From IMG/VR virus record IMGVR_UViG_3300024999_000029, positions 248,001 to 312,000 of that record: a stretch of 64,000 nt of DNA. The stretch is one strand, 5' to 3'. The translations under genes were made by a program, and so were the position numbers. Below the pieces are notes generated by a model, which had not been told where the DNA came from, did no database searches, and saw only the letters and a program-made list of their open reading frames with translations. Of this stretch, positions 46,637-62,793 are shown piece by piece (the first letter of the stretch is position 1; every line of letters begins with the position of its first letter).

Positions 46637-47852
46637 TAAATTTAGGGGCTTGGCAGCATAATACATAAACTGCTAAGAAAAATCTATTCTAATATACGGC
46701 GAAACTCCAGAGATGGACAACGCCTTCCAATTTTTAATGTTATTTATAAAATAAAATAAAATCATCACAAATATAAACTAAAATATAAAAAGGGTGATAT
46801 AATGGCTTTTCATAAAATCAAAAAGCAAGATAGTTTTGCGCAATGGTTTTTAGATAATTTTGGTATTGATAAATTCAATACATTAATAAAACATGAGAAA
46901 AACTTAGAAGTAGGATTAGATATATGGATGATATTTAAAAGAAGCACAGCTAAAATATGGTTCTATTGCGAAAATAAAAATTATCATGAATTTTGTATGT
47001 CAGCATATAATTATTATAAAGGTCAAAGATGTAAATATTGTGCAAGAACAAAATATATTCATCCTAAGGATTCTTTAGGACAGTATATTATTGATAATTT
47101 TGGAGAAGATTTTTTAAATATAATATGGTCAAGTAAAAATATAAAATCTCCTTTTAAATATTCAATAGGAACTGAAAAAAAAGTATGGTTTTCATGTATT
47201 AATGAAATACATGAAGATAAATTAAGACAAGTAAAAAATGCGGTAAGAGGCGATTTTTATTGTCCTTATTGTATGGAAAATAATAATTCTTCAAAATTAC
47301 AAGAAAAGGTAAATCAATATATAAATTCATTAGGATATAAAATAAATACAGAATGTAATTGCACTATTATCCCTAAAAATCCAAAAACAAAATTTAATTT
47401 ACCTTTTGATAATGAAATAGAAGAATTAAAATTAATAATTGAAGTCAATGGACGCCAACACTATGATGAAATTAGCAGTAATAGTAAGTGGCTCAATGGG
47501 AAAACAGCTAAAGAATATTTACATAATAGAAAACTTAAAGACAGATATAAAAAAATCTTTGCGAAATCGCAAGGATATTTTTATTTGGAGATTCCTTATT
47601 GGTGTGATGACTATAAAGAATCTTGGAAAGATTTAATAAACAATAAAATAAATAATATTAAAAAGGGAACAACGACTGAGACGAATAGACTACATTTCTG
47701 ATGTAGATGCAACAGTCTGAACGTCACGCTATAATCTAAAAAATGAAACGTGAGAGAAATGGTCGCTGGTAATCAGACCAGCTAAAGAAGAACCGTTTCC
47801 GCTATCGAACAGATAGTCAGTAACCTTAAATCAAGGTGAAAGTAACAGATTG
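46637..47852 (+). ncRNA. Group I self-splicing intron (1216 nt) in the TMP gene
   Basis: P1 with a U.G pair at U46636/G46645; P3 (46683-88/47684-89); P7 GACTG/CAGTC (47674-78/47713-17); P8 hairpin; terminal G 47852. Splicing restores GTALKSIISR in frame (1673-aa product). Confidence 0.92.
46802..47701 (+). CDS. Intron-encoded zinc-ribbon / EDxHD-like homing endonuclease
   Basis: LPFDNE...IEVNGRQHY nuclease motif; its 3' end runs through the intron P7/P3/P8 core. Confidence 0.85.
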   Translation: MAFHKIKKQDSFAQWFLDNFGIDKFNTLIKHEKNLEVGLDIWMIFKRSTAKIWFYCENKNYHEFCMSAYNYYKGQRCKYCARTKYIHPKDSLGQYIIDNFGEDFLNIIWSSKNIKSPFKYSIGTEKKVWFSCINEIHEDKLRQVKNAVRGDFYCPYCMENNNSSKLQEKVNQYINSLGYKINTECNCTIIPKNPKTKFNLPFDNEIEELKLIIEVNGRQHYDEISSNSKWLNGKTAKEYLHNRKLKDRYKKIFAKSQGYFYLEIPYWCDDYKESWKDLINNKINNIKKGTTTETNRLHF

Positions 47853-50800
47853 TAAATCCATAATTTCCAGAACATTTCGTATAGGCGAAGAAGGTGCTGA
47901 AGATGCAGGTAAAACAGAAGAGTATCTTAATTCTATAGGTATTGCTGTCAGAAAATCAGCTACAGAATTTAGGGATTTTTCTGGCATATTAGATGATATT
48001 AAAGGTAGATGGGGTTCTTTAACATCTACGGAAAAAAGTGCTTTAGCTCAACAAATGGCTGGAACCTGGCATTATTCAAAATTTATTGCATTAATGGAAA
48101 ATTATGGAATAGCACAAGATGCAACCAATAAAGCAATGAATAGTCAAAATTCAGCATTACAAGAAAATGCAAAATATATGAATAGTGTTGCTGGTAAAGT
48201 TGGACTATTTAAAGTTTCGTTAGAAAATTTATATTCCACAATTTTATCATCTGATGCTTTAAAAAATATATTAGATGGTTTAATTAAATTTATAGAAGTC
48301 ACAAATAGAGTTGTGACAGGATTGGGCGGATTTAATACAGCTTTATTATTAATAATTAATACTTTAATAATATTTAAAAGTAAGGCAATTGCTAGTGCTA
48401 TAACAAGTGTATGGGCATACATTGCCGCTTTCGGTTTAGCCGAAACAGCAACACTTGGGTTTAGTGCGGCAGTTAGTGTATTAAATACTGCTTTATTAGC
48501 ATTGCTTAAAAATCCTATAACATGGATACTTGCGGCAGTGGGAACATTGACTATTGGTATTTTTTCATGGATTAATGCTAATCAAAAATTAAAAGAATCA
48601 ATAATTGAAACAAATAAAGCTCAACTAGATTTTAACTTGGCTGTTAAAGATTTTTATCAAGATATGTCACCTGATAAAGTAAATGCAACTGCACAAGCTT
48701 TTGAAAATTTAAAAAAGCAACTTAATTATAAAAATGATAATGATTTACAAGAAGATATTAATAAAATTCAAGAGTTAAGAAAAGAATCTGAATGGGCTAA
48801 AAAAGTTTTATCTGATTCTGGCCGTAGTTCATATGAAAAGAATTTAGCTCAAAAAATATTACAACAACTATCTGATTTAGAAGATAAAACTAAAAAATAC
48901 ACTGAAGCTCAAAAAGAATTAGATACACAAAAGGCAATTACCAACATACTAGATACAGAATCCCAGAATAATATTGCCAAAAAGGTTAAAGGGAAATTAT
49001 CTGAATTAGATGCAGACAAAGAATTGATAAAACAGTATGAAAAAAGCGTTAAAGCTGGAAAAGAAGATAAAGAGATTCGTGACCAAATTTTAGATAAATA
49101 TCCTCAATATCTTAAAATGATTGGTGAGCATTCAGATAAAATTGGCATTAACACAGATACATTAAAAATTAATATAGATATTCAAGAAACTCTTGCAAAA
49201 GCTGAAATAGTAGAAGCACAAGTAGCAATGCGGGCAAGCTTAGATAAGACAACTACAATTGTAGAACAAACTAAGCAAAGAATAACGGCGTTAAAAGAAG
49301 AGCAATCCGCACTAGTAGCTATAAGTAAACCTATTTCTGTAGCTGATGTAGAAATTTCACCAGCTACAGAAATATTTAATGATCGAATAGAAGAAAAGTT
49401 TTCTCAAATAGTTGAGGCTGAAAAGGGTTTGGAACGACTTCAGTCAGCTATTGAAATTCAAAAAGGCTCTTTAGAATTAACTCCAGAACAAATTTTAGCT
49501 GCTGCAAAATCAGGTAAAAAAGGATATTTTTCAGATTCAGATGGAGATAAATCTTCCTTGCCAACTCTTAAAGAAGCAGTTGCTCGTGAAGAGTTAACTA
49601 AAGAACTTGTTAAGGCTTATAATAAAGAAGTTGATATATCAGATGTTAAGATTAAACATCTTGAGAGACAACTTAAAATAAATGACGAACAAAAAAATTA
49701 TAATAGAGAGCTTGAATTAACTAATTCACTTATATCAAACCAAGAGGCTAAAATTGGTCAACTTGGGACAGCTAATAAAAGTATAACAAAAGAGGCAGAT
49801 AAACTACGTGCCGATAATCTTAAATTTGACACAACCAAGTGGTTTGATGTGGGTGGAGAAGCAACAGTAGATTATAGGAAACTTCTTAATTCATTTGCTA
49901 TTGAATCAGAAAAAATACGTGCCAAAGCAGAAAAAACTAATACTAAAACAGCTATTCAAGAATCAAATAAACAGATTCAGGCTTTAGAAAATCAAAAGAA
50001 AAAAATTGAGGAATTATTTAACAATATTTATGCTCTTAAAAAGGCTTATGCTTCTAATACGGACGAAATATTAAAGACTGAAGATGCAGTTGATTCATTA
50101 AAACAAAGTGTTGTTAAATTAAATGAAGAACAAAAGAAACTCCAAGAAGAACTTTACAAAAAGCAAAAAAAATCTCTTGAAGAAATTTTAGATTTAGTCA
50201 CTGAGATGATTAAGCAAGAAGCGGAAGATCAAATTGACGCACTTGAAGAACAAGTTGATAAATATAAAGAAATAATTAGTGCAAAAAAAGAAGCATTGAA
50301 GCTTACTGAAGAACAACACGATTATGAGAAGTCTTTAGCTGAAAAACAAAAAGATATATCTAAGATTCAAAATCGTCTTTTAGAATTAAGTCTTGATGAT
50401 AGTCGTGCAGCACAGGCTGAAAGACTTAAATTAGAAGAAGACTTAGCAGATAAAACATCGGATTTAGATGAGTTGCAACATGATAGAAGTATTGAACTTC
50501 AAGAGCAAGCTTTAGATAAAGAATTAAAACAGTTTGAAGATACTAAAGACAAAGAGATTAAAGAAATTAAAGATTATCTTGATAAATCTGGACGTTTAAC
50601 TGCCGATGCTATGAAATTAATTAATACTCAAGGTGATACGGTTTATAACAATTTAGTAAAATGGAATGAATTGTACGGAGATTCGATTGAAAATAATGTA
50701 AAAAATTCCTGGGAGAGTGCTAAACAAGCCTTAAATAGTTATAAAAACTCTTTGAATCAAATTGATTATAATTTTGCATCACAAACTCTTAGCGATACTT

Positions 50801-51294
50801 TAAATGAGAGCGATATTATTGCTCAAATGCAAGCAAATTCTAAGTCTTGGTCTAATGCTAGTCCTGAATATAAAAAAGAGCTTGCGGCAGAGAATCTTAG
50901 ACTTGGAACAAGTATAGGATTAACCAGAGATGATAAGACTGGCATTTGGTATGATAAAAGTGGAGTTAGAGCTTATGCTGGTGGTGGCACAAGTACTGAA
51001 ACTCAACTTGCATTATTACATGGCACAAAAGCTAATCCAGAATGGATTCTTAATTCAGGTCAAATGAAAAGTTTGATTACTAATTTGACTTTACCTCAAT
51101 TCAAGATGCCTGAAGTTAAGGGATTATCTAATGGCAGTGGGGTTCAAATTGGTAGTTTGATTACAGTAAATGGAAATGTAGATAAAGCAGCTATGCCAAA
51201 ACTTGAAACTGTTGTAAATCAAGCAGTTGATAAGTTGGTTAATACGATGGGACTTAGGGGCAATACTAGGTCGACAAAATCATATAGCATTTAG
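47853..51294 (+). CDS. Tape measure protein, exon 2
   Basis: In frame after splicing; hydrophobic segment, long coiled coils, typical TMP C-terminus. Confidence 0.9.
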
Positions 51295-51385: not shown

Positions 51386-52174
51386 TTGGCTATACAGGCT
51401 TTAAATTTTATATATGACAATATTTCAAGCGAGGTATTTTCGGTCAAGATTGTGAATTTTAACTCCAGTGGTTTACAAGAAAATAATTTTGGAGGTAACG
51501 TAATTCCGATTTATGAATCAATAAAAAGAAAACATAATGTGTTTTTGTATGGGACTCAGCCGTCACAACCATTAGAATTTGAATTGAATATTGCAACAGA
51601 GGGAGAAGAACTTGACAGTTATTCACTAGGAGCATTGGGCAAGTGGCTCTTTGGTCATCAAGATTGGAAATGGCTACAAATTGAGCAAGTTTCATATGAA
51701 GGGTTATGGTTTAAGTGTTTATTATTAGATCCTCAAGTTATTTCAGTTGGTAATATGAATATAGGCTTTAAATGTAAGGTATTCTGTGACAGTTCATATG
51801 TATATTCTGATGAGTTTACATATAACCACAATATCACTACTTCTAATCAGCAAATTACATTTAATAATTTAAGTGATGCTAACTTGTATTTATATCCCTA
51901 TATATCCTTCACAACGTCTAGTACAACTACTAGCTTCAGTATAAAAAATTCCTCAGATAGTGATAGAGAATTTAAATTTACAAGTATTGCAAATAATGAG
52001 ACTATAACTGTGAATAATGATTTAAAAATTATAACGTCTAGTACATCTAATAATAGATTGAGTAATTTTAATTTAAAGTGGTTGAGGTTAGTTCCAGGAA
52101 CTAATAATTTAGTAGTTAATGGGAATGGTAGTATGTTTTTAAGAATGAGATTCCCAGTTAAGGTTGGTGGGTAA
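51386..52174 (+). CDS. Distal tail protein (Dit)
   Basis: Follows TMP; PLEFEL, WLFG, YPYI and WL.L.PG.N.L motifs. Confidence 0.8.
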   Translation: MAIQALNFIYDNISSEVFSVKIVNFNSSGLQENNFGGNVIPIYESIKRKHNVFLYGTQPSQPLEFELNIATEGEELDSYSLGALGKWLFGHQDWKWLQIEQVSYEGLWFKCLLLDPQVISVGNMNIGFKCKVFCDSSYVYSDEFTYNHNITTSNQQITFNNLSDANLYLYPYISFTTSSTTTSFSIKNSSDSDREFKFTSIANNETITVNNDLKIITSSTSNNRLSNFNLKWLRLVPGTNNLVVNGNGSMFLRMRFPVKVGG

Positions 52175-52621: not shown

Positions 52622-53026
52622 ATGTGTAAGGTCGGAGACATTATTTTAATTAAGAATTATATAGTTAATGGTGTACATTTAACAAAACATTCTTTCGTAG
52701 TTTTAAATGATAAAGCGGGACAAATTCAAGGCTTAGATTACGATATAATATGCAATACCATGTCTTCATTTAAAAATGAGGAGCAACGAAAGAAAAAGTT
52801 GAGTTATTCTAGTAATTTTGAGATATTACATAATGATCAAGTTATAAGTAATGGTGGAAATGATATAGATGGCTTTATAAAAGCGGAACAATTTTATTAT
52901 TTTGATAAAGATAAAATTGATTATATGGTTATTGGCACTATGAAAGCAGAAGCTTTTAATTTATTATTAGAATTTATAGATGAATTAGAAATACCAATTC
53001 AAGATGTAGTAGATAATTTAAAGTAA
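52622..53026 (+). CDS. PemK/MazF-like endoribonuclease toxin
   Basis: GDIILI...H.FVVL...M.S...GFIK.EQFY fits the PemK fold pattern. Confidence 0.55.
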   Translation: MCKVGDIILIKNYIVNGVHLTKHSFVVLNDKAGQIQGLDYDIICNTMSSFKNEEQRKKKLSYSSNFEILHNDQVISNGGNDIDGFIKAEQFYYFDKDKIDYMVIGTMKAEAFNLLLEFIDELEIPIQDVVDNLK

Positions 53027-53040
53027 TTTTACTGATTTTT

Positions 53041-53064
53041 AAGACCTCTCTAACTAGAGGTCTT
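53041..53064 (+). terminator. Terminator AAGACCTCT/AGAGGTCTT
   Basis: Perfect 9-bp stem after the toxin-like gene. Confidence 0.75.
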
Positions 53065-53179
53065 ATTCATTGTAAATAACCTCCTTTTCAGTAATATTAT
53101 ACTTGCATAATATTTTCCATAAGATATAATAATTATATCAATATAAAAATATATAAATCACTGAGAAGGAGAGATAAAA

Positions 53180-54136
53180 ATGAATAAATGTACTAAATGT
53201 GGGGCTATCAACACAGATGAAACAATATATTGTGAGTGTGGTGAACCTTTGAATGACAATATTTCCGATAGAGATAATTCAATAAGCAAGGAACTGAGAA
53301 ATACACTTATTTTTGGTGGAATATTCGCTATTGTTGTATTATTTATAATTATTATTACTAATGTAAATAGTAAGTACCAACAGCCAGATCATAGCGAGCA
53401 GTCAAATGTAAGTATAGATGATAATGAAATAAAAATGAATAATTACAAAAATGAGCTAAAAGATAAAATGTCATCTATTATTAAAAAATATGATTTTGCC
53501 ACATCATTCGAACTTGATAGTGATATGGATGCTCATATGACGATAAAAGTTAATGATAAATTTGACAAATTAAGTAATGTAGAAAAGTATAAGGTATTAA
53601 GTAATTTATATCATGATTTTAAGGAAACAATAAATGAATGTATTATGGATAAACTTGATAGCAGTTATATAGATACTGATATAGGGAAGCGTATTTTAGC
53701 CATTTCACCAAAAGGAACATTTACACAAAATTATGATCACCTAACATTGCCAGATGGGAAAGAAGTATGCGAGGACGATACACTAACAAAAGAAGAAAAA
53801 AAGCAACAACAGGAGGAAATAGAACAATTTAAAAAACAACAAAATCTTATTGATAGTAGCGTGAATGGTTTAATTATTCAAAATGAAAAGATATGGACAA
53901 ATGATGGCGATTATAGTTATTTTAAAGGAAGAGTTAAGAATATCGGCAATTTAGACATTACATATTGGAAATTAACGCTTGAACTTTGTGATAGCAATGA
54001 AAATGTATTAGATACAGATTATACAAACTCATCGGAAACAATTAGACCTGGAAATATGAAAGAGTTTGAAATAATGCATAAATATGACTCTGAGTATAAA
54101 AAAGCAAGAGTTTTTATAGATGAAGCTAAGAACTAA
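53180..54136 (+). CDS. Membrane-anchored protein: N-terminal zinc ribbon, one TM, C-terminal FxLYD Ig-like domain
   Basis: CTKCG...CECG; TM LIFGGIFAIVVLFIIII; GRVKN.G...L.L.D....LDT...PG...FEI. Confidence 0.7.
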   Translation: MNKCTKCGAINTDETIYCECGEPLNDNISDRDNSISKELRNTLIFGGIFAIVVLFIIIITNVNSKYQQPDHSEQSNVSIDDNEIKMNNYKNELKDKMSSIIKKYDFATSFELDSDMDAHMTIKVNDKFDKLSNVEKYKVLSNLYHDFKETINECIMDKLDSSYIDTDIGKRILAISPKGTFTQNYDHLTLPDGKEVCEDDTLTKEEKKQQQEEIEQFKKQQNLIDSSVNGLIIQNEKIWTNDGDYSYFKGRVKNIGNLDITYWKLTLELCDSNENVLDTDYTNSSETIRPGNMKEFEIMHKYDSEYKKARVFIDEAKN

Positions 54137-54358
54137 TTATATTATTAATGTAAAAGATTTATTTAAACTGGTGATGAGCCAGTTTTCTTTTTATAAAAAT
54201 CTCTAATAATTTTCACCTCAACTTTTATTAAAATATTGATAATTCTAATATTTCTCTTGACAAATTATTAATATATTGATAATATTAATATATTAAGAAA
54301 TTTTATATTGATTAATTTTATGGTATAATCAAAATAAAAATGTTAATGAGGGATATTA

Positions 54359-54595
54359 ATGGAAGTAATGATTAAATTAAAAATAAATGAAAAAATTGAA
54401 GAGTACAGAAAAGACACAGGAGCAACGAAAACTTGGATTTCTCATAAACTTGGAATGAGTAAACAAAGATTGTCCAATATCGGCAACGGGGACAATATTA
54501 CTTTAAAATTATTACTAAGAGTTGCAATATTTCTAAATTGTAAAACCGAAGATTTATACGAATATAGTATTGTTGACGATAATATTCAATCTTAG
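54359..54595 (+). CDS. Cro/C1-type (XRE) HTH regulator
   Basis: KTWISHKLGMSKQRLSNI...L..LL.VA..L.C..EDL. Confidence 0.8.
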   Translation: MEVMIKLKINEKIEEYRKDTGATKTWISHKLGMSKQRLSNIGNGDNITLKLLLRVAIFLNCKTEDLYEYSIVDDNIQS

Positions 54596-54616
54596 ATATT
54601 TTTGTATTTATTTTTG

Positions 54617-54645
54617 TTGACATTATTCAAACTCTTTTGTATACT
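54617..54645 (+). promoter_or_regulatory. SigA promoter of the antirepressor operon
   Basis: TTGACA-17 bp-TATACT. Confidence 0.8.
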
Positions 54646-54701
54646 ATTAATGCAAGGTAGATTTTACCTTTTGTAAAAAATAATATATAGGAGGGTTTAT
54701 T

Positions 54702-55001
54702 GTGAGTAGATTAAAAACAATTACGATTAATGAATTTGAAAATGATTTTAGTAAATTAGAAGGAAAATCAGTTTGCGTAGATATCAAAGGGTCTATAAAT
54801 TTATTGAAGGTTATAACCAACTTCAACGTATGGCAAGACGAAAATAAAATTACATTGTTTGATCATGAAGATGAATCCGAAGTTAATATTAAAAAAGATG
54901 TTATTGATTGTATTGTAAAAGATAGACATGATACGAGTTTATTTTTAAAGAATGGTATGGAAGTTAATGTTTATGGGCAGGAGGACGTTGATCATGAATA
55001 A
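54702..55001 (+). CDS. Hypothetical protein
   Basis: GTG start behind GGAGGG; coupled to the next gene. Confidence 0.55.
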   Translation: MSRLKTITINEFENDFSKLEGKSVCVDIKGSINLLKVITNFNVWQDENKITLFDHEDESEVNIKKDVIDCIVKDRHDTSLFLKNGMEVNVYGQEDVDHE

Positions 55002-55776
55002 TTTAATGATAAAAGAAGTAAGTTTCAACGGAGATAGTTTACTGGCGGTTAAGAATAATTATGATAGTAAAATATATGTCGGAGTTAGTTATATCTGTAA
55101 TGGTATAGGGTTATCTGAAGGACAGATGAAAAATGAAAGAAAGAAAATACAGGAAGATTTAGTCCTTTCTAAAGGGGGACGAAATTTAATCCTCCCTACA
55201 AATGGTGGCAATCAAGAGGTTTTGGGTATAGAATTAGACTTCCTCCCTCTTTGGTTGGCTAAGATTTCTATCACTCCTAAAATGATAAAAGATAATCCTG
55301 ATGTAGTAAGCAAACTTGTTGATTATCAATTGAAAGCAAAAGACGTTTTAGCAAAAGCATTTATATATGGAGAATACAACTTGCCAACCACATATAAAGA
55401 AGCACTAATACAATTGCTTACTGTAGTTGAGCAAAAAGAAAAGATTGAAGAACAAAACAAAGTACTTATTCCAAAGGCTGAAGGATATGATGTATTAATT
55501 GCAGCAGATGGTTATCAAAACATGAATGAGGTAGCCAAGGCATTTTCAATTGGTCGCAATAAATTATTTAAATTACTAAGAAATGAAAAAATTCTCATGG
55601 ACAACAACGTACCTTATCAAAAATACATCAACAATAATTATTTTTTAGTTAAAGAGATATCAATTAGTCGTGGCAATTACTACTATAATGGCCTGCAAAC
55701 GTTTATTACAGCTAGAGGATTGGGCTTCTTAAAGGACTTGCTAAAAGAAAACGGCTACTTGCAAAGTATAGCCTAA
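54994..55776 (+). CDS. Phage antirepressor (P22 AR-N-like + KilAC/ANT C-terminus)
   Basis: GGAGG SD favours the ATG at 54994; LPLWLAKI and YQ...A..L; C-terminal PK...AK....GRNKLF..LR...TARG..F. Confidence 0.85.
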   Translation: MNNLMIKEVSFNGDSLLAVKNNYDSKIYVGVSYICNGIGLSEGQMKNERKKIQEDLVLSKGGRNLILPTNGGNQEVLGIELDFLPLWLAKISITPKMIKDNPDVVSKLVDYQLKAKDVLAKAFIYGEYNLPTTYKEALIQLLTVVEQKEKIEEQNKVLIPKAEGYDVLIAADGYQNMNEVAKAFSIGRNKLFKLLRNEKILMDNNVPYQKYINNNYFLVKEISISRGNYYYNGLQTFITARGLGFLKDLLKENGYLQSIA

Positions 55777-55794
55777 ACAAATATCAAACAAAAG

Positions 55795-56067
55795 ATGAGA
55801 TTTGACTTAGACTATATAATCAACTTATGCAGACCCAATAATATCTCCGTCAAAGTTATTGTTAATAAATACGGTGGAGATGATATACTATTAACACACA
55901 GGCGGGACACCTATAAGGTACAGCAAGAAGATGATTGCTATATTTTGCTAAAGCGAAATTGTGCTCAAAATCCAAAAAGACGTGAATATTATCATCTAGT
56001 TAAAAATGCTGGAGATAATGGTAAGTTTTATAGTTTGAAAGATTTGATTTTTGGGATAATTAAATAA
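55795..56067 (+). CDS. Hypothetical protein, paralog of 37734-38066
   Basis: Shared motifs as described for 37734; weak SD. Confidence 0.5.
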   Translation: MRFDLDYIINLCRPNNISVKVIVNKYGGDDILLTHRRDTYKVQQEDDCYILLKRNCAQNPKRREYYHLVKNAGDNGKFYSLKDLIFGIIK

Positions 56068-56154
56068 ATATAAAATCCAAGCAAGTAGCGGATAGTTCTC
56101 TACCCGCTTTTTGTTTTTATAGTAAATTAAAATATAATTTAGAAAGGTAGAATA

Positions 56155-56484
56155 ATGGAGTTAAAAGAAAATATTTTAGGTCAATTACATATATATTACG
56201 AATCAGTAAGTAGTGACTGTAAACCTATGGCTTTTTTCCCTATTCAAGAACGATATGTTGAAGAAATAAAAAACTATGTTTTCTCTCGGAAATTAAACAT
56301 CCATATTGAACCTTTATCAGATGGTTGGTTTACTATTTATATATATAAATATGATTATTTAATTCATATTATAGAAAATTTGCCCCAAAAACCACAAACT
56401 CCCTATGACCATTGGGTTATAGGAAAAGCCTGTGGCTATTCAGATTCAGCTATTGGTGAGTTTATCAAGTCAAAATTTAAGTAA
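56155..56484 (+). CDS. Hypothetical protein
   Basis: AAAGG SD, 109-aa ORF. Confidence 0.55.
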   Translation: MELKENILGQLHIYYESVSSDCKPMAFFPIQERYVEEIKNYVFSRKLNIHIEPLSDGWFTIYIYKYDYLIHIIENLPQKPQTPYDHWVIGKACGYSDSAIGEFIKSKFK

Positions 56485-56521
56485 TTATTGTGTTACAATT
56501 AGAGCATTTTTTTCAACATAC

Positions 56522-56549
56522 TTGACATATAACCATGCTATGGTATAAT
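56522..56549 (+). promoter_or_regulatory. SigA promoter of the repeat-RNA/PBECR4 locus
   Basis: TTGACA-16 bp-TATAAT with TGn; core identical to the promoter at 62013. Confidence 0.85.
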
Positions 56550-56595
56550 TAAATTAAGGTAGAATAAAATATCTTATGTAGTTTATATAATATCT

Positions 56596-56684
56596 GTCGG
56601 GATGGAGACGAAAAACTCATTCTCATTGGTCGGGATGAAGACCTAAAACTCATTCCCATTGCAGAGTGAACTGCTAAAAATCAG
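56596..56684 (+). ncRNA. Candidate antitoxin RNA: two 33-nt tandem repeats plus a diverged partial third unit
   Basis: 56596-56628 and 56629-56661 are 29/33 identical; each forms stem, purine loop, stem, A-tract and loop-complementary tail; unit 3 has a covarying stem (GCAG/CTGC). Confidence 0.7.
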
Positions 56685-56685
56685 T

Positions 56686-56710
56686 AAAAGATGGCTTAGG
56701 TCATCTTTTT
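56686..56710 (+). terminator. Terminator between the repeats and the nuclease gene
   Basis: AAAAGATGGC/GTCATCTTTT stem, TTAG loop, T run, directly before the AGGAG SD. Confidence 0.85.
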
Positions 56711-56730
56711 ACTTTTAATAGGAGATACAT

Positions 56731-57447
56731 ATGACAGAAGAAAAAAGTTTTAAAAAACGTGTAAAAGATGAAATTATAAATGGTGCAAAGATTTATAAGG
56801 AAAATTTTGTGGATTATGAATATCTTATATGTTCAGAAGCTTTTACTGCTAAAGAATTTTATACTATTGACGCAAAAGAAGATAATTATCAACATTTAAC
56901 TGGAGTTAATTCCTTAATTGCATCAAAAGATTTTTTTAACAAGTCATATGATAAAACTCTTCAAGAATCTGATTTTGATTTTAATAAGCGTGGGCAAAGT
57001 GAAAAATCAGTAAAAGGTTCTGTAAGAAGAAAAATTAGTGTTTTGCCTAATATTATACATATTTTTGAGAATGGTACATTAGTAGAAGAAAATCTTATAA
57101 AAAATCAAATTAAATGTTCTTTTGCAACCACCGATAAGAAATGTACATTAGGCTTTATTGACTTGACAAAATCAAGACCTATGTCTTTACTTAAAGGTGA
57201 CGAGATTGACAATACAAAAGCTAAAAACATTGACTTGCTTTTAAGGAAGCATATATCCAAAGATAAATTTAATGAAATTATAATTGGTGATTTTGTCGCA
57301 TTGCAAAAATATAGAGAAAACATAGAAGCGTTTTTAGATGAAAAAATTATAACGGAACTAGATAAAATGAAAGTACTCTTAGTCAAACAGGAATTACAAG
57401 AAGCTCAAGAGCAAGTTGCTTCGGGCGAATATGTAAGACCTCTCTGA
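56731..57447 (+). CDS. PBECR4-like (BECR-fold) predicted RNase
   Basis: A..Y...F....Y, N(F/Y).HLTG, V..K...L, LGF.....P.SLL motif order, as in PBECR4 proteins; recognised by eye. Confidence 0.68.
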   Translation: MTEEKSFKKRVKDEIINGAKIYKENFVDYEYLICSEAFTAKEFYTIDAKEDNYQHLTGVNSLIASKDFFNKSYDKTLQESDFDFNKRGQSEKSVKGSVRRKISVLPNIIHIFENGTLVEENLIKNQIKCSFATTDKKCTLGFIDLTKSRPMSLLKGDEIDNTKAKNIDLLLRKHISKDKFNEIIIGDFVALQKYRENIEAFLDEKIITELDKMKVLLVKQELQEAQEQVASGEYVRPL

Positions 57448-57552: not shown

Positions 57553-60435
57553 ATGAATTTTACATATGATCTTTTTAATCGCATTGAAGCAATCCAAATA
57601 ATTCTCTGTAAAAATAACTTAGAAAAAGTTGGTGTCTTAGGTTTAGCATACGATAAAAAAGCAATATTGAGGCTTACGGACTTCTCGGAAATTTCTTTTA
57701 CATATCCTCAAAAAGTTGATAATAAAACAACTCAATATTATAATGATATTAAAACTAAAAAAATAATTTATGTTCCAGAGTTAGGTTATTTTAGACTTGA
57801 AAAAGTAAAGATTGAATCGGATGGCATCAGGGAGGTAAAAAATTGTGTTGGTTATTCTATTCAGATAGAATTAAAAAATAAACAATTAGTTAATTTCTCA
57901 GGTACGTATAAACTATATGACAGTTTAAAACCCCAAGAAAGTTTGATGGGTATTCTTATAGATTATTTTCCAAATTGGAGTATTAATGAGGTTGATGAGA
58001 ATCTTTGGAACATCTATCGTACATATGACATTTCAGAGAAGGATATCTATTCATTTTTAATGGATGATTTAATGACCTCATTTAATTGCGTGGTACTATT
58101 TGATATTATGAATCGTAAAATAAGTGTCAAAGAATTAGGAAATGTATCTAAAGAAACTGATATATATATTAGTTTTGATAATCTTATTAAGTCAGCAGAA
58201 ATTGAAGAATTGTCGGATGAAATTTGCAGTTCACTGAGGGTGAGGGGTGGATCGGAAAGTACTGACATCAGGAGTGTAAACCCGAATGGAACTGACACTA
58301 TTTATAATATAAACTATTATAAAACACTTGAGTATATGAGCCAGAGTCTAATAGATGCTTTAAATGCATATGAAATAAAATATAATAGTAATAAGACTAC
58401 ATATTCAACAAAATTAACACAAATTAAAGATAAGAATACTATTTTAATAACCAAAAATGGAGAATTAGATACACTCAATACTCAGATGGATGTGCTTGTA
58501 GCAACAAAAATGGTTAAAATACAAGGCGGTTTATCATTAACTGAAATAAATTCTCAAATATCTTCAAAACAATCTGAGATAAATACAAAAAATAATGAGA
58601 TAACGGGAATAAAAAATGAGATTGCGGTATTGCAAAGCAATCTAAATGATATAGTAGTTCAATTAAAATTCAGTAATAATTTTACAGTAGATCAATTAAA
58701 AGAGTTGGACAATTTTTTAATTGAATCCACATATACCGACTCAACATTTATAGTTGTAGACAGTATGACGGAAGTGCAGAAGCAAGAGAAAATGCAAGAA
58801 TTATATGATTATGCTAGTACTATATTAACACGACTGTCTCAACCAAGATTTTCTTTTAGTATTTCTAGTGCAAACTTTGTTTTTCTAAAAGAGTATGAAA
58901 GTTTTATGAAACAATTAGAATTAGGGTGTTTAATTAAAACTGAATTAAGAGAAGATTATATAGTAACACCAATTTTACTTGAAATTGAGATTGATTTTGA
59001 ACAGGATGATAATTTTAATCTTCGTTTCGGGAATAGATATAAGCTGAGTGACAACACGTTTACTCTAGCCGATATAATGAGTCAAACTACACAAAGTTCA
59101 AGCACTATAAGTTTTGAAAAGTATACTTATAAAGATTGGTATAAAAACAGTAAAGATTCGGTTAGTACGTTCATCGAAAGTGCCTTAAATGCTTCCGTAA
59201 ACAATATCAAATCCTCCGATAACCAGGATATCTTAATAGATCAGCATGGCATGCGCTGTAGACAATTCGATACAAGTACTAATGCATTTAAACCTGAACA
59301 ACTTTGGATAGTCAATAACATGATCTCGATGTCTAATGATGGATTTTCTAACACAGGTAAGATTGCAATCGGTAAAATTATAGATGATCGTTACGGAGAA
59401 ATTTGGGGTATAGCCGCACCTCTATTAGCAGGAAAAATTCTTACGGGCAACAACCTTCGCATAGAGAATTCAAAAAATAGTTTTGTACTGGATGAAAATG
59501 GTTGTGTGCTTACAGATGCAAAATTCACTCTCCAAACATCTAATGGAAAAGGCAAAATTATTTTAGACCCCACATTAGGTATAAGAATACAAGGAAATAC
59601 AGGGGGTACTTTTGTAGATAAATTTTATGTAGACTCTTTGGGGAATGTGAAATTTTCAGGAGAATTGTCAGCTGCTACTGGAACTTTCAGTGGAACTGTT
59701 CAAGCAGGTAGTATTATATCAAGTACTATCACTGGAGGAACAATCTCTATCGGTTCTAATTTTAGTGTTAATTCTAGTGGAATAATTACAGCTACAGGAG
59801 CTAATATTTCTGGTAATATAACTGCGAATGCTTTAACTGCAAATGCCACTATACAATCTCCAATTGTTACTGGTGGAACAATAAAAACTTCAAGCAGTGG
59901 ACAAAGAATTGAATTAAGTTCCAACAAACTACAAGCATTTGATTCAAATGGCATATCAAGAATAAAATTTGAGCCAGTAACTACTTCTGAAGTAAATTAT
60001 TATGAATTACAATTTCAAGGACAAAGTGGTAGTCAACAAGGAAGTATATCTGGAACAGATAATCAACTTAATATTGTTGGTCATAATGCACTTGTCTTAA
60101 ATGGTGGTAATGATAAGGTGTATTTTACTTCAGATGTCGATTTTCAAGGTAATATTGCTTATATTAATACGATTGAACCAGATGTTGCATTAGCTATTAA
60201 TGGAATATTAGGACATACTGGTTCTAGAATAGGATTTTTTGGAGTAGATCCAGCTATACAACAAACAGCTTCATTATTAGGCGATAAATTTACAACTGAA
60301 ACAGCAGACCTTACTTACGGCAGTATTGAGGTTTCCATGTTGACTCATTTAAAATCTGACGTAGGAAATTTGTATAATAAAGTTAATGGTATATTGACTA
60401 AATTGGCAGAATATGGATTATTTGAATTAGAATAA
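57553..60435 (+). CDS. Tail-associated (Tal/endopeptidase-like) protein with beta-helical C-terminus
   Basis: SEISF..P, GYF, DI.SVNP.G, coiled coil, G.IA, G.F.G.(V/I).A repeats. Confidence 0.75.
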   Translation: MNFTYDLFNRIEAIQIILCKNNLEKVGVLGLAYDKKAILRLTDFSEISFTYPQKVDNKTTQYYNDIKTKKIIYVPELGYFRLEKVKIESDGIREVKNCVGYSIQIELKNKQLVNFSGTYKLYDSLKPQESLMGILIDYFPNWSINEVDENLWNIYRTYDISEKDIYSFLMDDLMTSFNCVVLFDIMNRKISVKELGNVSKETDIYISFDNLIKSAEIEELSDEICSSLRVRGGSESTDIRSVNPNGTDTIYNINYYKTLEYMSQSLIDALNAYEIKYNSNKTTYSTKLTQIKDKNTILITKNGELDTLNTQMDVLVATKMVKIQGGLSLTEINSQISSKQSEINTKNNEITGIKNEIAVLQSNLNDIVVQLKFSNNFTVDQLKELDNFLIESTYTDSTFIVVDSMTEVQKQEKMQELYDYASTILTRLSQPRFSFSISSANFVFLKEYESFMKQLELGCLIKTELREDYIVTPILLEIEIDFEQDDNFNLRFGNRYKLSDNTFTLADIMSQTTQSSSTISFEKYTYKDWYKNSKDSVSTFIESALNASVNNIKSSDNQDILIDQHGMRCRQFDTSTNAFKPEQLWIVNNMISMSNDGFSNTGKIAIGKIIDDRYGEIWGIAAPLLAGKILTGNNLRIENSKNSFVLDENGCVLTDAKFTLQTSNGKGKIILDPTLGIRIQGNTGGTFVDKFYVDSLGNVKFSGELSAATGTFSGTVQAGSIISSTITGGTISIGSNFSVNSSGIITATGANISGNITANALTANATIQSPIVTGGTIKTSSSGQRIELSSNKLQAFDSNGISRIKFEPVTTSEVNYYELQFQGQSGSQQGSISGTDNQLNIVGHNALVLNGGNDKVYFTSDVDFQGNIAYINTIEPDVALAINGILGHTGSRIGFFGVDPAIQQTASLLGDKFTTETADLTYGSIEVSMLTHLKSDVGNLYNKVNGILTKLAEYGLFELE
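59923..60152 (+). repeat. Direct repeat R1, copy A (230 bp)
   Basis: 199/230 identical to 60670-60899 with no indels; the first 67 and last 52 bp are perfectly identical. Confidence 0.95.
60373..60426 (+). repeat. Direct repeat R2, copy A (54 bp)
   Basis: Identical to 61089-61142. Confidence 0.95.
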
Positions 60436-60496
60436 GGGATATTAATTAATATCCCTTTATTTTCATTAATTATATTATATTTTTATTTATGAAATA

Positions 60497-60524
60497 TTGA
60501 CAAATCTACCCAATGTGGTATACT
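60497..60524 (+). promoter_or_regulatory. SigA promoter
   Basis: TTGACA-16 bp-TATACT with TGn. Confidence 0.8.
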
Positions 60525-60567
60525 AAAAGTATAATAAAATTATATTTAATAATATTGGAGGTATATC

Positions 60568-61083
60568 ATGAAAAAATATAAACAATTTATCATAGGACTT
60601 TTACTTGGTTCATTATTATTTTCCACACTGGGAGTATTCGCTGCCAATGAATTAATAAATATTAAATTAAACAAACTACAAGCATTTGATTCAAATGGCA
60701 TATCAAGAATAAAATTTGAGCCAGTAACTACTTCTGGAGTAAATTACTATGAATTGCAGTTCTTTGGTCAAGGTGGGAATGAAGAAGGGATAATATCTGG
60801 AACTAATGGGAAACTTAATATTGTAGGTCGTAACAAACTTATTTTAGATGGTGGTAATGATAAGGTGTATTTTACTTCAGATGTCGATTTTCAAGGTAAG
60901 AACCTTAACTTTAGTAATGCAACGGTTAATGGATTAGACACAAATTCACATCTTCAAAAAAATCACAATCATGGAATTAAACCAGGAACAAAATTGGCTA
61001 TTACTGATGGACGAGGGAAAATTACAGGATATGTTGAATGGACTGAGGATGGAGGTTTTACTCATTCTCATAATATAGAATAA
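60568..61083 (+). CDS. Chimeric protein: signal peptide + copy of tail segment R1 + alternative His-rich tip
   Basis: N-terminal 34 aa paralogous to the 61923 minus-strand gene; middle homologous to the tail protein; ends HNHG...HSH. Confidence 0.75.
   Translation: MKKYKQFIIGLLLGSLLFSTLGVFAANELINIKLNKLQAFDSNGISRIKFEPVTTSGVNYYELQFFGQGGNEEGIISGTNGKLNIVGRNKLILDGGNDKVYFTSDVDFQGKNLNFSNATVNGLDTNSHLQKNHNHGIKPGTKLAITDGRGKITGYVEWTEDGGFTHSHNIE
60670..60899 (+). repeat. Direct repeat R1, copy B
   Basis: See copy A at 59923-60152. Confidence 0.95.
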
Positions 61084-61088
61084 TTGAC

Positions 61089-61142
61089 TATAATAAAGTT
61101 AATGGTATATTGACTAAATTGGCAGAATATGGATTATTTGAA
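61089..61142 (+). repeat. Direct repeat R2, copy B (non-coding here)
   Basis: Identical to the last codons of the tail gene but lies after the 61083 stop. Confidence 0.95.
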
Positions 61143-61173
61143 ATAGTTGATTAATAGGGGTGTTGAATATCCC

Positions 61174-61923
61174 CTATTTTAATAATGGTAAAACATTTTG
61201 AGTATAATAATTATATGGGATATAATAATGCAGAACATCTTCAGAATCAGTATATGTTGTAAATGGTATGTTATTTATTAATATATCTCCTTCTTGTATT
61301 TTATGAATAGCTTTGGCTTTAGAAGCCGACCTCATACTCTTATCTTTTTTTATATTTTCTAATTGTGTTAAATCTTTTTTATACAAACTCAAAGTATCAT
61401 TATCTTTATTTATTTTAGTGGTATATCCTACAGCAAGTTGTTTACCGCTATATTTATCAGGCTTAACATATTGGTTATATTTACTTCCTATATACCTAGT
61501 AGGCACATACTGACCGCCATCAATATACACTATGGGTAATCCATCAGAAGTTTTCTCAACATTTTTATTACGAGATTGTTCATAAGGATTAAGTGTTTTA
61601 ATATCTACTTTATCAATTTGTTCAGTTTCATAAACACCTTGAGTTACAGTAATATTCTCAGTTACACGAGCTATTTCTATATGACCGTTGGTTTGATTAA
61701 AAACAACTGGAATTTTTAAAACTTTACCAATATCTCCCAATTTCATATAGGTATAATCATTTATATTATAACCTTCAACGGCTACTTGCTCTCCATTAAA
61801 GAATATAGGATATTGATTTAGTTTGATAGTCAGTCCTAATTCATTAGTGGCAAATACTCCCAGAGTAGAAAATAATACTGAACCAATTAAAAATCCTACA
61901 GTAAATTGCTTATATTTTTTCAT
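61174..61923 (-). CDS. Secreted protein with copper-amine-oxidase-N/stalk-like domain
   Basis: GGAGG SD favours the ATG at 61923; Sec signal ending VFA; GYNINDYTYMKL.DI...L...V.F stalk motif. Confidence 0.75.
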   Translation of the reverse strand: MKKYKQFTVGFLIGSVLFSTLGVFATNELGLTIKLNQYPIFFNGEQVAVEGYNINDYTYMKLGDIGKVLKIPVVFNQTNGHIEIARVTENITVTQGVYETEQIDKVDIKTLNPYEQSRNKNVEKTSDGLPIVYIDGGQYVPTRYIGSKYNQYVKPDKYSGKQLAVGYTTKINKDNDTLSLYKKDLTQLENIKKDKSMRSASKAKAIHKIQEGDILINNIPFTTYTDSEDVLHYYIPYNYYTQNVLPLLK

Positions 61924-61966
61924 AATAACCTCCAAAAATTTAATAATTATAGTTTGTTTTATTTTC

Positions 61967-61994
61967 AGTATATCATACTGGTCGAATTTGTCAA
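61967..61994 (-). promoter_or_regulatory. SigA promoter, divergent from cptIN
   Basis: TTGACA-16 bp-TATACT with TGn on the minus strand; similar to the promoter at 60497. Confidence 0.8.
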
Positions 61995-62012
61995 TATTTT
62001 TGTCGTTAAGAC

Positions 62013-62040
62013 TTGACATGGTATTATGCTATGGTATAAT
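62013..62040 (+). promoter_or_regulatory. SigA promoter of the cptIN-type locus
   Basis: TTGACA-16 bp-TATAAT with TGn. Confidence 0.85.
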
Positions 62041-62104
62041 TAAATTAAGGACAGAATAAAATAACTTGTAATAGGAAACCCCTTGCCTGATAGTAGGGAT
62101 CTGA

Positions 62105-62225
62105 ACAAACACGCTTCACAATGTGCGGCAAAGAAACATTGTTAATACAAAAGTGCTTCACAATGTGCATTAAATTACATTGTTGATACAAACACGCTTC
62201 ACAATGTGCGGCAAAGAAACATTGT
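62105..62225 (+). ncRNA. cptI: Type III antitoxin RNA (CptI-like), about 2.9 repeats of 41-42 nt
   Basis: Units at 62105, 62147 and 62188; loop ACAATGT pairs perfectly with downstream ACATTGT in all three; stem CGC/GCG becomes TGC/GCA in unit 2. Confidence 0.85.
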
Positions 62226-62252
62226 AAGAAAGCCTTTTATGGGCTTTCTTTT
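62226..62252 (+). terminator. Terminator between cptI and cptN
   Basis: AAGAAAGCC/GGCTTTCTT stem plus T run. Confidence 0.85.
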
Positions 62253-62265
62253 ATATGAGGTACAA

Positions 62266-62793
62266 ATGAAAAAGAATGCCATATATTTTGGAAATAAAGA
62301 CATATATCAAAAAATTAGAAATGCTGGTGGAGTATGGAATGATTCTAAAGATAGACCTATTGTATGCTTGCTAGAATCAACAGAAACAATAGGCTTGTAT
62401 TGGGCTATTCCAGTGGGGAATTGGGAGCATCGAGATCAGACAGCTAAAAATAGAATTGAGAAATATGTGTCTTACCCAAAATCAGATTTAAGGTCGTGTT
62501 ACTATCATGTCGGCAAGACTAATGAAAAATCAATTTTCTTTATAAGTGATGTTATCCCTATAGCTAAAAAATACATAGATAGAGAATATAAAGGGTTTGA
62601 CAAAAAGTTGTATGTAATTAAAAATAAAAAACTCATACAATCTTTAGAAGAAAAATTAACAAGGATTTTAGCTTTTGAAGCTACAAATAATAATTATTTT
62701 AGACAACGTATTACTGATGTTAAACATGTGTTGATTGAAGAATTAGAACTAGAAAATACATTCGGAAAAGTTGCACCAATCAAAGAGGAATAA
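62266..62793 (+). CDS. cptN: Type III TA toxin, CptN family endoribonuclease
   Basis: RP.......G.YW.IP.. and S.F.I.D..PI..KYI.REY match CptN motifs; GAGG SD favours 62266 over the GTG called inside the repeats. Confidence 0.85.
   Translation: MKKNAIYFGNKDIYQKIRNAGGVWNDSKDRPIVCLLESTETIGLYWAIPVGNWEHRDQTAKNRIEKYVSYPKSDLRSCYYHVGKTNEKSIFFISDVIPIAKKYIDREYKGFDKKLYVIKNKKLIQSLEEKLTRILAFEATNNNYFRQRITDVKHVLIEELELENTFGKVAPIKEE

What the first reader, a model, noticed from the sequence alone, without database searches (positions are those of the whole stretch)
60497..61994. Signal peptide fused to a piece of the phage's own tail tip: possible secreted decoy
Seen: the promoter, SD and first 34 codons of 60568 are an inverted paralog of the secreted stalk-domain gene at 61923 (MKKYKQF..G.L.GS.LFSTLGVFA.NEL). 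They are joined in frame to R1' and tipY, giving an intact 171-aa ORF with its own terminator. Inference: a newly born chimeric gene that would export a tail-tip fragment from the lysogen, which could mask the receptor or act in superinfection exclusion; it may also be a neutral by-product of the rearrangement.
Basis: partly seen in the sequence, partly recalled or inferred. Interest (0 to 1): 0.6.

Follow-up and report, generated by a model that had tools for sequence, protein, structure and literature searches.

The report
Signal peptide fused to tail-fibre tip
A groundwater phage carries a young chimeric gene that joins the promoter and export signal of a neighbouring secreted-protein family to a complete tail-fibre end module. 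That module's tip differs from the tip on the phage's own tail, so the product could coat host cells against rival phages, or it could be a leftover of tip swapping.

Summary
ORF 60568-61083 (171 aa) is a three-part chimera.
- Promoter, SD and codons 1-34 are an inverted paralog of the exported 'stalk' gene start (163 nt, 76%).
- Codons 35-111 (R1') copy part of the 960-aa tail protein (230 nt, 87%).
- Codons 112-171 (tipY) form an HxH tip that occurs nowhere else in the record.

New findings:
- Residues ~27-171 match the whole C-terminal module of many phage fibre proteins, always at their extreme C-terminus.
- The virion protein carries the other tip type (tipX), so the gene does not encode the phage's own tip.
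- Its terminator is the ancestral tail-gene terminator.
- Four loci from three other phages place the tail/fibre gene directly against a convergent signal-peptide 'stalk' gene. Only this phage has the 171-aa gene between them.
- The identical gene lies on 19 contigs from several samples of one aquifer study, so it is not an assembly artefact.
- No other signal-peptide-to-tip fusion was found.
- The mature part is predicted to form an intertwined homotrimer (0.90; best control 0.00).
- The next gene is a CptIN-like type III toxin-antitoxin system.

Receptor masking against tipY phages is my leading reading (~0.4). A neutral by-product is close behind (~0.3).

Side finding: the 349-kb record looks like two related ~175-kb genomes joined.

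The parts
57553..60435 (+). Tail tip / minor tail protein gene (960 aa). It is the source of R1 and carries tipX.
   Evidence: phrog_6211 minor tail protein, E 1.9e-64. Relatives carry PF24049 YOMG_N and PF06605 Prophage_tail.
59923..60152 (+). R1 shaft module in the tail gene (direct repeat D1).
   Evidence: In frame.
60153..60372 (+). tipX, the virion protein's tip (IGFFG...LGLF type).
   Evidence: Alignment. 81% identical to the tip of P0051, which sits on a different fibre backbone.
60373..60430 (+). D3, the last codons of the tail gene.
   Evidence: 57 of 58 nt identical to 61089-61146.
60434..60457 (.). Terminator-like hairpin t1, after the tail gene.
60497..60524 (+). Sigma-70-type promoter of p171 (TTGACA, 16 nt, TG-n-TATACT; 11 of 12 matches).
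   Evidence: The hexamers are conserved in all three paralog cassettes while the spacers differ.
60557..60561 (+). Shine-Dalgarno GGAGG, 6 nt before the ATG.
60568..61083 (+). p171, the chimeric ORF (171 aa, P0001).
60568..60642 (+). Sec-type signal peptide, codons 1-25. The n-region has charge +3, the hydrophobic core is about 16-19 residues, and VFA precedes the predicted cut.
   Evidence: Matches the stalk-family consensus.
60643..60669 (+). Codons 26-34 (ANELINIKL), the first strand of the stalk-family mature protein. The illegitimate in-frame junction to R1' lies at its end.
60670..60899 (+). R1', a copy of the R1 shaft module. The first 67 nt and last 52 nt are identical to R1. The middle ~110 nt is about 28% diverged.
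   Evidence: dN/dS 0.38.
60900..61080 (+). tipY, the HxH tip domain (HNHGI-PGT ... GGF-H-H).
   Evidence: Found at the extreme C-terminus of about 20 phage fibre proteins. The nearest is P0011, 64% identical over the tip.
61089..61154 (+). D3', the remnant of the ancestral tail-gene end (YNKVNGILTKLAEYGLFEIVD plus stop). It is out of frame with p171.
   Evidence: Collinear at 90% with the tail-gene end, terminator and stalk gene of L017.
61157..61173 (.). Terminator-like hairpin t2. It is the ancestral tail-gene terminator, placed between the convergent p171 and stalk genes.
61174..61923 (-). Exported 'stalk' protein gene (249 aa), the conserved convergent partner of the fibre gene.
   Evidence: PF07833 Cu_amine_oxidN1 hit is weak (E 0.003, below cut-off). 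Family member P0021 carries PF07833. The same pairing is seen in L004/L005, L017 and L029.
61967..61994 (-). Promoter of the stalk gene, the mirror image of the p171 promoter.

Best explanation
What it is (well supported): p171 is a lineage-specific, probably young chimeric gene. It arose at a recombination hot spot between the tail-tip gene and its conserved convergent neighbour, an exported 'stalk' protein gene. The 3' end of a tail gene (shaft module R1' plus the HxH tip tipY) now lies behind a copy of the stalk family's promoter, SD and signal peptide. The join is in frame and illegitimate. The tail gene itself continues into a different tip (tipX), a duplicated end (D3) and a new terminator.

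How it most likely works (inferred): host RNA polymerase transcribes it from the consensus promoter. The Sec pathway exports the product, and signal peptidase cuts after VFA at residue 25. The 146-residue mature chain lacks the virion-attachment part of a fibre. It folds outside the cell into an intertwined homotrimer, a free fibre end. That trimer binds the surface receptor recognised by tipY fibres on the producing cell and its neighbours. This blocks adsorption by competing phages that use tipY. It leaves the phage's own tipX route open.
For: Chimeric anatomy.

The body is a complete fibre end module:
- The representative search found 35 hits. The R1-like shaft and the HxH tip are always contiguous and always at the extreme C-terminus.
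- Homotrimer model: score 0.90 against a best control of 0.00, contacts agree in at least 89%, partner pLDDT at least 85. Both HxH motifs lie in the interface.
- Monomer model: pLDDT 85.6.

Export signal: charge, hydrophobic core and VFA fit a type I signal peptide. There is no lipobox, no LPXTG motif and no second hydrophobic segment.

Lineage-specific insertion: phage A of the same record (L004; L005 and L006 show the same gene pair), L017 and L029 all have the fibre gene directly convergent with a signal-peptide stalk gene. None has a gene between them.

Real and retained:
- The identical gene and layout lie on 19 contigs from several samples.
- One of these is a variant (L014) with foreign gene-conversion patches on both sides but none inside.
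- No variant with p171 deleted, and no D1 x D1' recombinant, was found among JGI metagenome contigs. This is despite the 58-nt and 230-nt direct repeats that should promote loss.

Context:
- A CptIN-like type III toxin-antitoxin system sits next door.
- A lipoprotein gene sits at the same promoter in L017.
- Receptor-binding protein loci are reported to be encoded together with cognate superinfection exclusion genes (PMC8594841).
Against: - There is no expression, export or binding evidence.
- The near-identical repeat arms (67, 52 and 58 nt) suggest a recent event. Intactness may therefore be inherited rather than selected, and an in-frame join has a one-in-three chance.
- All 19 contigs come from one aquifer population.
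- No other signal-peptide-to-tip fusion exists among about 15 billion proteins, so there is no comparative support for a function.
- It is unknown whether the tip, and not another part, determines receptor choice.
- It is unknown whether an intertwined fibre trimer folds after Sec export without a chaperone.
- No known exclusion family matches in Pfam, PHROGs, NCBIfam or PADLOC.
Confidence: 0.4

Rival explanations
1. Neutral by-product. A tip-module swap, or an unequal recombination between co-infecting relatives, displaced the old 3' end of the tail gene (R1'-tipY). That end happened to land in frame behind a stalk-family promoter and signal-peptide cassette. The ORF is intact only because it is young.
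For: - The repeat arms are almost identical (67, 52 and 57 of 58 nt) while the interior is foreign.
- D3' and t2 are the ancestral tail-gene end.
- The locus exchanges patches with co-resident phages.
- Tips X, Y and a third type (ending AKF-) shuffle among fibre backbones.
- The fusion is unique.
Against: - Phage genomes purge useless DNA, and flanking direct repeats would delete the segment easily. Yet all 19 contigs keep it, and no deleted form was found.
- All expression signals are of consensus quality.
- The product is predicted to be a well-folded trimer.
Confidence: 0.3
2. Spare tip cassette for host-range switching. R1/R1' and D3/D3' act as homology arms. Recombination or gene conversion moves tipY into the tail gene, producing virions with a new receptor specificity. 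Expression of p171 would be incidental.
For: - Perfectly identical arms flank exactly the variable tip: 52 nt on the left and 57 of 58 nt on the right.
- Tip exchange between backbones is common in this group.
- Gene-conversion patches are seen in the L014 variant.
Against: - The repeats are direct, so a crossover deletes tipX irreversibly.
- No recombinant tail gene carrying tipY was found in metagenome contigs. This is weak evidence, because assembled contigs hide rare variants.
- A silent cassette would need neither a promoter nor a signal peptide.
Confidence: 0.15
3. Programmed DNA switch. This would be either an invertible segment of the Mu G / P1 C type, using the 163-nt inverted repeat, or a diversity-generating retroelement acting on R1.
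For: An inverted repeat brackets 60655-61836. The record holds serine and tyrosine recombinases.
Against: - Inversion would only swap two equivalent promoter and signal-peptide copies, and would change no product.
- The alternative tip lies in direct, not inverted, orientation to the tail gene.
- No small Hin/Gin-type invertase is adjacent. The two serine recombinases are large (581 and 601 aa) and far away.
- R1 and R1' mismatches are not adenine-specific.
Confidence: 0.03

Closest known systems
Superinfection-exclusion or receptor-blocking genes next to receptor-binding protein genes. Examples from my own knowledge: T5 Llp beside the pb5 gene, Cor of phi80/N15, HK97 gp15, lambda Lom. From a paper: Drexlerviridae receptor-binding protein loci encoded with cognate exclusion proteins (PMC8594841).
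   Same: A small gene directly beside the tail-tip or receptor-binding gene. It has its own host-type promoter and terminator, and its product is targeted to the cell envelope. A related phage (L017) has a lipoprotein gene at the same promoter.
   Different: There is no sequence similarity to any of them. Here the exported protein is itself derived from a fibre tip, which none of those are. It has no lipid anchor or membrane segment, so it would be released rather than held on the cell. The function is untested.
C-terminal receptor-binding modules of phage tail fibres with His-x-His metal sites. From my own knowledge: the T4 gp37 tip and gp12, and the P2/phi92 spike apex.
   Same: A trimeric, intertwined beta structure with two HxH motifs at the predicted interface. 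It sits at the extreme C-terminus in all homologues.
   Different: No solved relative by sequence, and only weak fold matches (Z of 6 or less). In p171 the virion-attachment part is replaced by a signal peptide.
Tail-fibre tip switching systems: Mu G segment, P1 C segment, and mosaic tail-fibre genes.
   Same: Two alternative tips (X and Y) follow one conserved shaft module, with conserved linker sequences at the module borders.
   Different: The orientation is direct and there is no invertase. The second tip has its own promoter and export signal instead of depending on the constant part of the fibre gene.

Membership tests
Type I (Sec, signal peptidase I) signal peptide | Positively charged n-region, a hydrophobic core of about 10-20 residues, and small residues at positions -3 and -1 | tested here: met
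   MKKYKQ has charge +3. Kyte-Doolittle (15-residue window) peaks at 2.29 at residue 7. VFA precedes A26. No SignalP-type predictor was available.
Type I (Sec, signal peptidase I) signal peptide | Actual export and cleavage | not testable with these tools
   Needs expression in a host and N-terminal sequencing or secretome proteomics.
Lipoprotein or wall-anchored protein | Lipobox cysteine, LPXTG motif, or a wall-binding domain | tested here: not met
   No cysteine and no LPXTG. No Pfam domain.
Phage tail-fibre C-terminal module (R1-type shaft plus HxH tip) | Conserved motifs RI-..-YYEL-F-GQ-G..ISGT-G-LN, HNHGI-PGT and GGF-H-H, located at the extreme C-terminus | tested here: met
   Aligned end to end with P0002, P0003, P0008, P0011, P0025 and others.
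Phage tail-fibre C-terminal module (R1-type shaft plus HxH tip) | Homotrimer | tested here: met
   Model only. Score 0.90 against a best control of 0.00. 20 of 30 solved homo-pairs and 1 of 23 single chains reach the mark. Contacts agree in at least 89% and pLDDT is at least 85. My own alignment and three copies were used, so the calibration holds only roughly.
Virion tail fibre (structural protein) | N-terminal domain that attaches the fibre to the baseplate or tail tip | tested here: not met
   Homologues carry 100-800 residues upstream of the module. p171 has only the signal peptide.
Known superinfection-exclusion or defence families | Sequence match to a described family | tested here: not met
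   No hit in Pfam, PHROGs, NCBIfam or PADLOC.
Known superinfection-exclusion or defence families | Blocks adsorption or DNA entry of a phage | not testable with these tools
   Needs adsorption and plaque assays.
Invertible tail-fibre segment (Mu G / P1 C) | Alternative tips in inverted orientation, plus an adjacent small serine invertase | tested here: not met
   tipY is in direct orientation. The only PF00239 genes are large recombinases at C1:148 kb and C1:322 kb.
Diversity-generating retroelement | Template and variable repeats that differ only at template adenines | tested here: not met
   The 32 mismatches involve all four bases in both copies.

The most novel reading that the evidence does not exclude
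A phage has converted a spare receptor-binding tip into a secreted, soluble homotrimer. The trimer coats the receptor used by rival phages (tipY users) and spares its own tipX route. This would be an exclusion factor derived from a receptor-binding protein that acts as a diffusible 'public' shield. The conserved convergent signal-peptide 'stalk' genes beside fibre genes would then be an unrecognised family of fibre-linked envelope factors.
Probability: 0.25. Interest if true: 0.8.

Novelty: new variant of a known kind. Interest (0 to 1): 0.5.

Why it matters
If the product is exported and binds cells, this would to my knowledge be the first exclusion factor built from a tail-fibre tip. It would also be a clear example of gene birth by module capture at a phage recombination hot spot. 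The mature 146-residue protein would be a ready-made minimal receptor-binding trimer of a widespread but structurally unsolved tip family (HNHGI-PGT / GGF-H-H). The recurring pairing of a fibre gene with a convergent exported 'stalk' gene, seen in four phages here, points to an unstudied partner of receptor-binding proteins in phages of low-GC hosts. If instead it is a by-product, it still records step by step how tail tips are exchanged.

Tried and rejected
Searches that gave nothing useful:
- The phage collection gave only a match to the RNA repeats at 62107-62290 by blastn, and nothing for p171 by tblastn.
- Pfam, PHROGs, NCBIfam and PADLOC gave nothing for p171.
- Viral-contig scans found only the signal peptide with p171 as query, and nothing with the tail protein as query.
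- The PDB profile search found nothing.
- Foldseek and VIA-align against the PDB gave only weak, tied matches (Z of 6 or less). Beta-helix fibre pieces were among them. This does not assign a fold.
No read-level or RNA test was therefore possible, and read laying was not used.
- Exact-pattern scans of JGI metagenome contigs for a tail-tipY recombinant and for a p171-deleted form both returned 0. This is weak negative evidence.
- The word search with the tail protein's C-terminal part did not list the query itself. It therefore cannot exclude a 927-aa recombinant.

Ideas rejected:
- Diversity-generating retroelement: the mismatches are not adenine-specific.
- Functional inversion switch: it would not change any product, and no invertase is adjacent.
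- Assembly artefact: the same layout appears in independent assemblies.
- P0019 as a free spare tip cassette: it is the 3' part of a split fibre gene.

Full report
**1. Observation**

The window is G000:C1:248001-312000 of a 349,050-bp virus record with 28.9% GC. ORF 60568-61083(+) encodes 171 aa, here called p171. Three repeats define it.
- An inverted repeat, 60492-60654 / 61837-61999, of 163 nt at 76%.
- A direct repeat D1, 59923-60152 / 60670-60899, of 230 nt at 87%.
- A direct repeat D3, 60373-60430 / 61089-61146, with 57 of 58 nt identical.

The inverted repeat holds a near-consensus promoter, TTGACA-16-TG-n-TATACT, at 60497-60524(+). Its mirror lies at 61994-61967(-). It also holds a GGAGG SD 6 nt before the ATG, and about 34 codons shared with the exported 'stalk' gene 61923..61174(-). 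D1 is in frame in both the 960-aa tail protein gene (57553-60435; phrog_6211 minor tail protein, E 1.9e-64) and p171. Within the record, p171 matches the tail protein at E 8.8e-39, the stalk ORF at E 9.7e-13, and a third signal-peptide paralog at C1:128943-129560 at E 1.2e-8.

**2. What the parts are**

*N-terminus.* Residues 1-25 have the features of a Sec signal peptide. The n-region charge is +3, the hydrophobic core peaks at 2.29 on the Kyte-Doolittle scale, and VFA precedes the predicted cut. There is no cysteine, no LPXTG motif and no second hydrophobic segment. Residues 1-34 match the consensus of the stalk family, including its first mature strand. The junction to R1' is an illegitimate in-frame join at a short AAAC-type microhomology.

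*Body.* An exhaustive representative search returned 35 hits. In about 20 of them the R1-type shaft and a tip with the motifs HNHGI-PGT and GGF-H-H are contiguous, and they form the extreme C-terminus of phage fibre or tail proteins of 245-916 aa. P0034 is the one exception, with the tip internal. The nearest tip is P0011, 64% identical. So residues ~27-171 are a complete fibre end module that lacks any virion-attachment part.

*Structure.* A monomer model has pLDDT 85.6. Three copies give a complex score of 0.90 against a best control of 0.00. Contacts agree in at least 89%, and partner pLDDT is at least 85. The mark was reached by 20 of 30 solved homo-pairs and by 1 of 23 single chains. My own alignment and three copies were used, so the calibration holds only roughly. 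The interface runs the whole length and includes both HxH motifs. This supports an intertwined homotrimer but does not prove one. No solved relative was found by sequence. Fold matches are weak.

**3. The tip is not the virion's own**

The 960-aa protein continues after R1 into tipX, the IGFFG...LGLF type. That type is also seen in P0013, P0051 and the L017 tail protein. tipY occurs nowhere else in the record. Tips shuffle among backbones in three observed cases.
- P0003 and P0013 share their N-terminus and shaft but carry tipY and tipX respectively.
- P0051 has the backbone of the record's 519-aa fibre but carries tipX at 81% identity. The 519-aa fibre itself ends in a third tip type.
- The L017 tail protein has a different shaft joined to tipX.

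**4. History**

A related phage contig (L017) has its 973-aa tail gene ending in D3. A terminator follows, and 18 nt downstream of the tail-gene stop lies the convergent stalk gene, with nothing between them. L017 aligns at 90% with window 61089-61934, beginning exactly at D3'. D3', together with hairpin 61157-61173, is therefore the ancestral tail-gene end. Copy 1 (D3 plus hairpin 60434-60457) is the derived one.

Within D1, the first 67 nt and last 52 nt are identical. The middle ~110 nt is about 28% diverged, with dN/dS 0.38, and the mismatches are not adenine-specific. This mosaic, together with 57 of 58 identities in D3, points to a recent rearrangement with a foreign interior. It does not point to long divergence in place. 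The 76% identity of the promoter and signal-peptide copy is best read as origin from another family member. It should not be read as evidence of selection since the fusion.

**5. Comparative context**

The fibre gene is directly convergent with a signal-peptide stalk gene at four other loci.
- The first half of the record (C1:127387-129560; the two genes overlap by 4 nt).
- L005 and L006.
- L017.
- The unrelated contig L029, whose fibre ends in a tipY-type tip.

Only the window's phage has p171 between the two genes. In L017 the same promoter drives a 194-aa lipoprotein (lipobox SFVG-C) followed by the stalk gene.

Immediately to the right of the stalk promoter, the window holds what looks like a type III toxin-antitoxin system.
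- Three tandem RNA repeats at 62105-62225 match Rfam RF02920 at 93 bits, against a gathering score of 52.
- A hairpin follows the repeats.
- A 175-aa protein matches the CptIN toxin family at E 1.6e-13, below the curated cut-off.

The region is therefore an accessory island devoted to envelope and inter-phage functions. The literature notes receptor-binding protein loci encoded together with cognate exclusion proteins (PMC8594841).

**6. Is it real, and is it unique?**

P0001 is the only member of its cluster. No other signal-peptide-to-tip fusion appears in either protein search. The only hits that start at residue 1 are stalk proteins (P0015, P0021, P0035).

The identical protein lies on 19 contigs. 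Ten were inspected, from JGI and ENA assemblies of several runs of one groundwater study. All show the same order: 960-aa gene, then the 171-aa gene, then the convergent 249-aa gene. All are 98.9-100% identical to the window.

The variant contig L014 has two SNP clusters. One (61750-61801) is 100% identical to the L017 stalk gene. The other (60301-60360) gives the P0051-type tipX. There is no change in the 1.39 kb that includes p171. The locus therefore exchanges patches with co-resident phages while p171 is kept. Pattern scans of JGI metagenome contigs found no tail-tipY recombinant and no p171-deleted form. This is weak evidence, because assembled contigs hide rare variants.

**7. Interpretation**

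*Shown.* The chimeric anatomy, the completeness of the fibre module, lineage specificity, and presence in independent assemblies.

*Supported by a model.* The homotrimer.

*Inferred.* Transcription, export, cleavage, receptor binding and any effect on adsorption.

The tip differs from the virion's, and the product has no anchor. The most coherent function is therefore a released trimer that occupies the receptor of tipY phages, giving heterotypic exclusion without blocking the phage's own route. I put this at about 0.4. A young neutral by-product of tip exchange is at about 0.3. A spare cassette for tip switching is at about 0.15. Programmed inversion or a diversity-generating retroelement is essentially excluded.

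'Lysogen' is not established. Recombinases and an anti-repressor are present, but no integrated state was seen.

**8. Limits**

No SignalP-type predictor was available. The host is unknown. A low-GC Gram-positive host is suggested only by weak similarity to Clostridioides phage records and by YomG-like tail protein domains.

**9. Side finding**

The record's two halves are collinear and 80-92% identical in patches, at offsets of 157-177 kb. The first 127 nt and the last 120 nt of the record both recur identically around 173,265-173,602. This is the signature of a path through a shared repeat that joins two related circular genomes of about 173.5 kb and about 175.7 kb. It does not look like one 349-kb phage. 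The window lies in the second genome.

Noticed in passing
G000:C1, whole record (window = C1:248001-312000): The 349,050-bp 'huge phage' record looks like two related genomes joined through a shared ~338-nt repeat. The halves are collinear at 80-92% identity in patches. The record's first 127 nt and last 120 nt recur identically at C1:173,265-173,602. This implies circles of about 173.5 kb (A) and about 175.7 kb (B). One genome with two diverged halves is not formally excluded.
   Followed up: partly
window 62013-62793: Likely a phage-borne type III toxin-antitoxin system. It has a 12-of-12 consensus promoter at 62013-62040. Three tandem ~41-nt RNA repeats at 62105-62225 match Rfam RF02920 'Fusobacteriales-1' (93 bits; gathering score 52). 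A hairpin lies at about 62226-62252. A 175-aa protein (62266-62793) matches the CptIN toxin family (E 1.6e-13, below the curated cut-off). The repeats are the only part of the region with DNA similarity to Clostridioides phage-plasmid records. The match suggests the Rfam motif may be a type III antitoxin.
   Followed up: partly
window 61174-61923(-); C1:127387-129560; L005 6001-8174; L017 738-4414; L029 2-928: A recurring gene pair: a tail-fibre or tail-tip gene directly convergent with a signal-peptide 'stalk' (Cu_amine_oxidN1-like) protein gene, 0-18 nt apart or overlapping. It is seen in four different phages. The function of the partner is unknown.
   Followed up: partly
L017 122-706: In a related phage, the promoter homologous to the stalk and p171 promoter drives a 194-aa lipoprotein (lipobox SFVG-C) ahead of the stalk gene. 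This recalls lipoprotein exclusion genes beside receptor-binding protein genes.
   Followed up: no
window 45057-51294: The tape-measure gene is split into two ORFs (45057-46661 and 47836-51294) by an HNH or homing endonuclease gene (46802-47701).
   Followed up: no
window 43947-44951 and 52622-57447: A tyrosine integrase sits inside the virion module. Between the Dit gene (51386-52174) and the tail-tip gene lies a block of accessory genes. It includes an Ant-type anti-repressor (54952-55776) and a PBECR4 nuclease-domain protein (56731-57447).
   Followed up: no
L014 (window 60290-62113): A strain variant has two short gene-conversion patches. Positions 61750-61801 are identical to the L017 stalk gene. 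Positions 60301-60360 give the tipX version found on P0051. There are no other differences. This shows ongoing patchwise exchange between co-resident phages at this locus.
   Followed up: yes
L028 2-1438: A fibre gene of the same family is split into a 305-aa ORF and a 140-aa ORF (P0019). This may be a frameshift or a programmed split.
   Followed up: no
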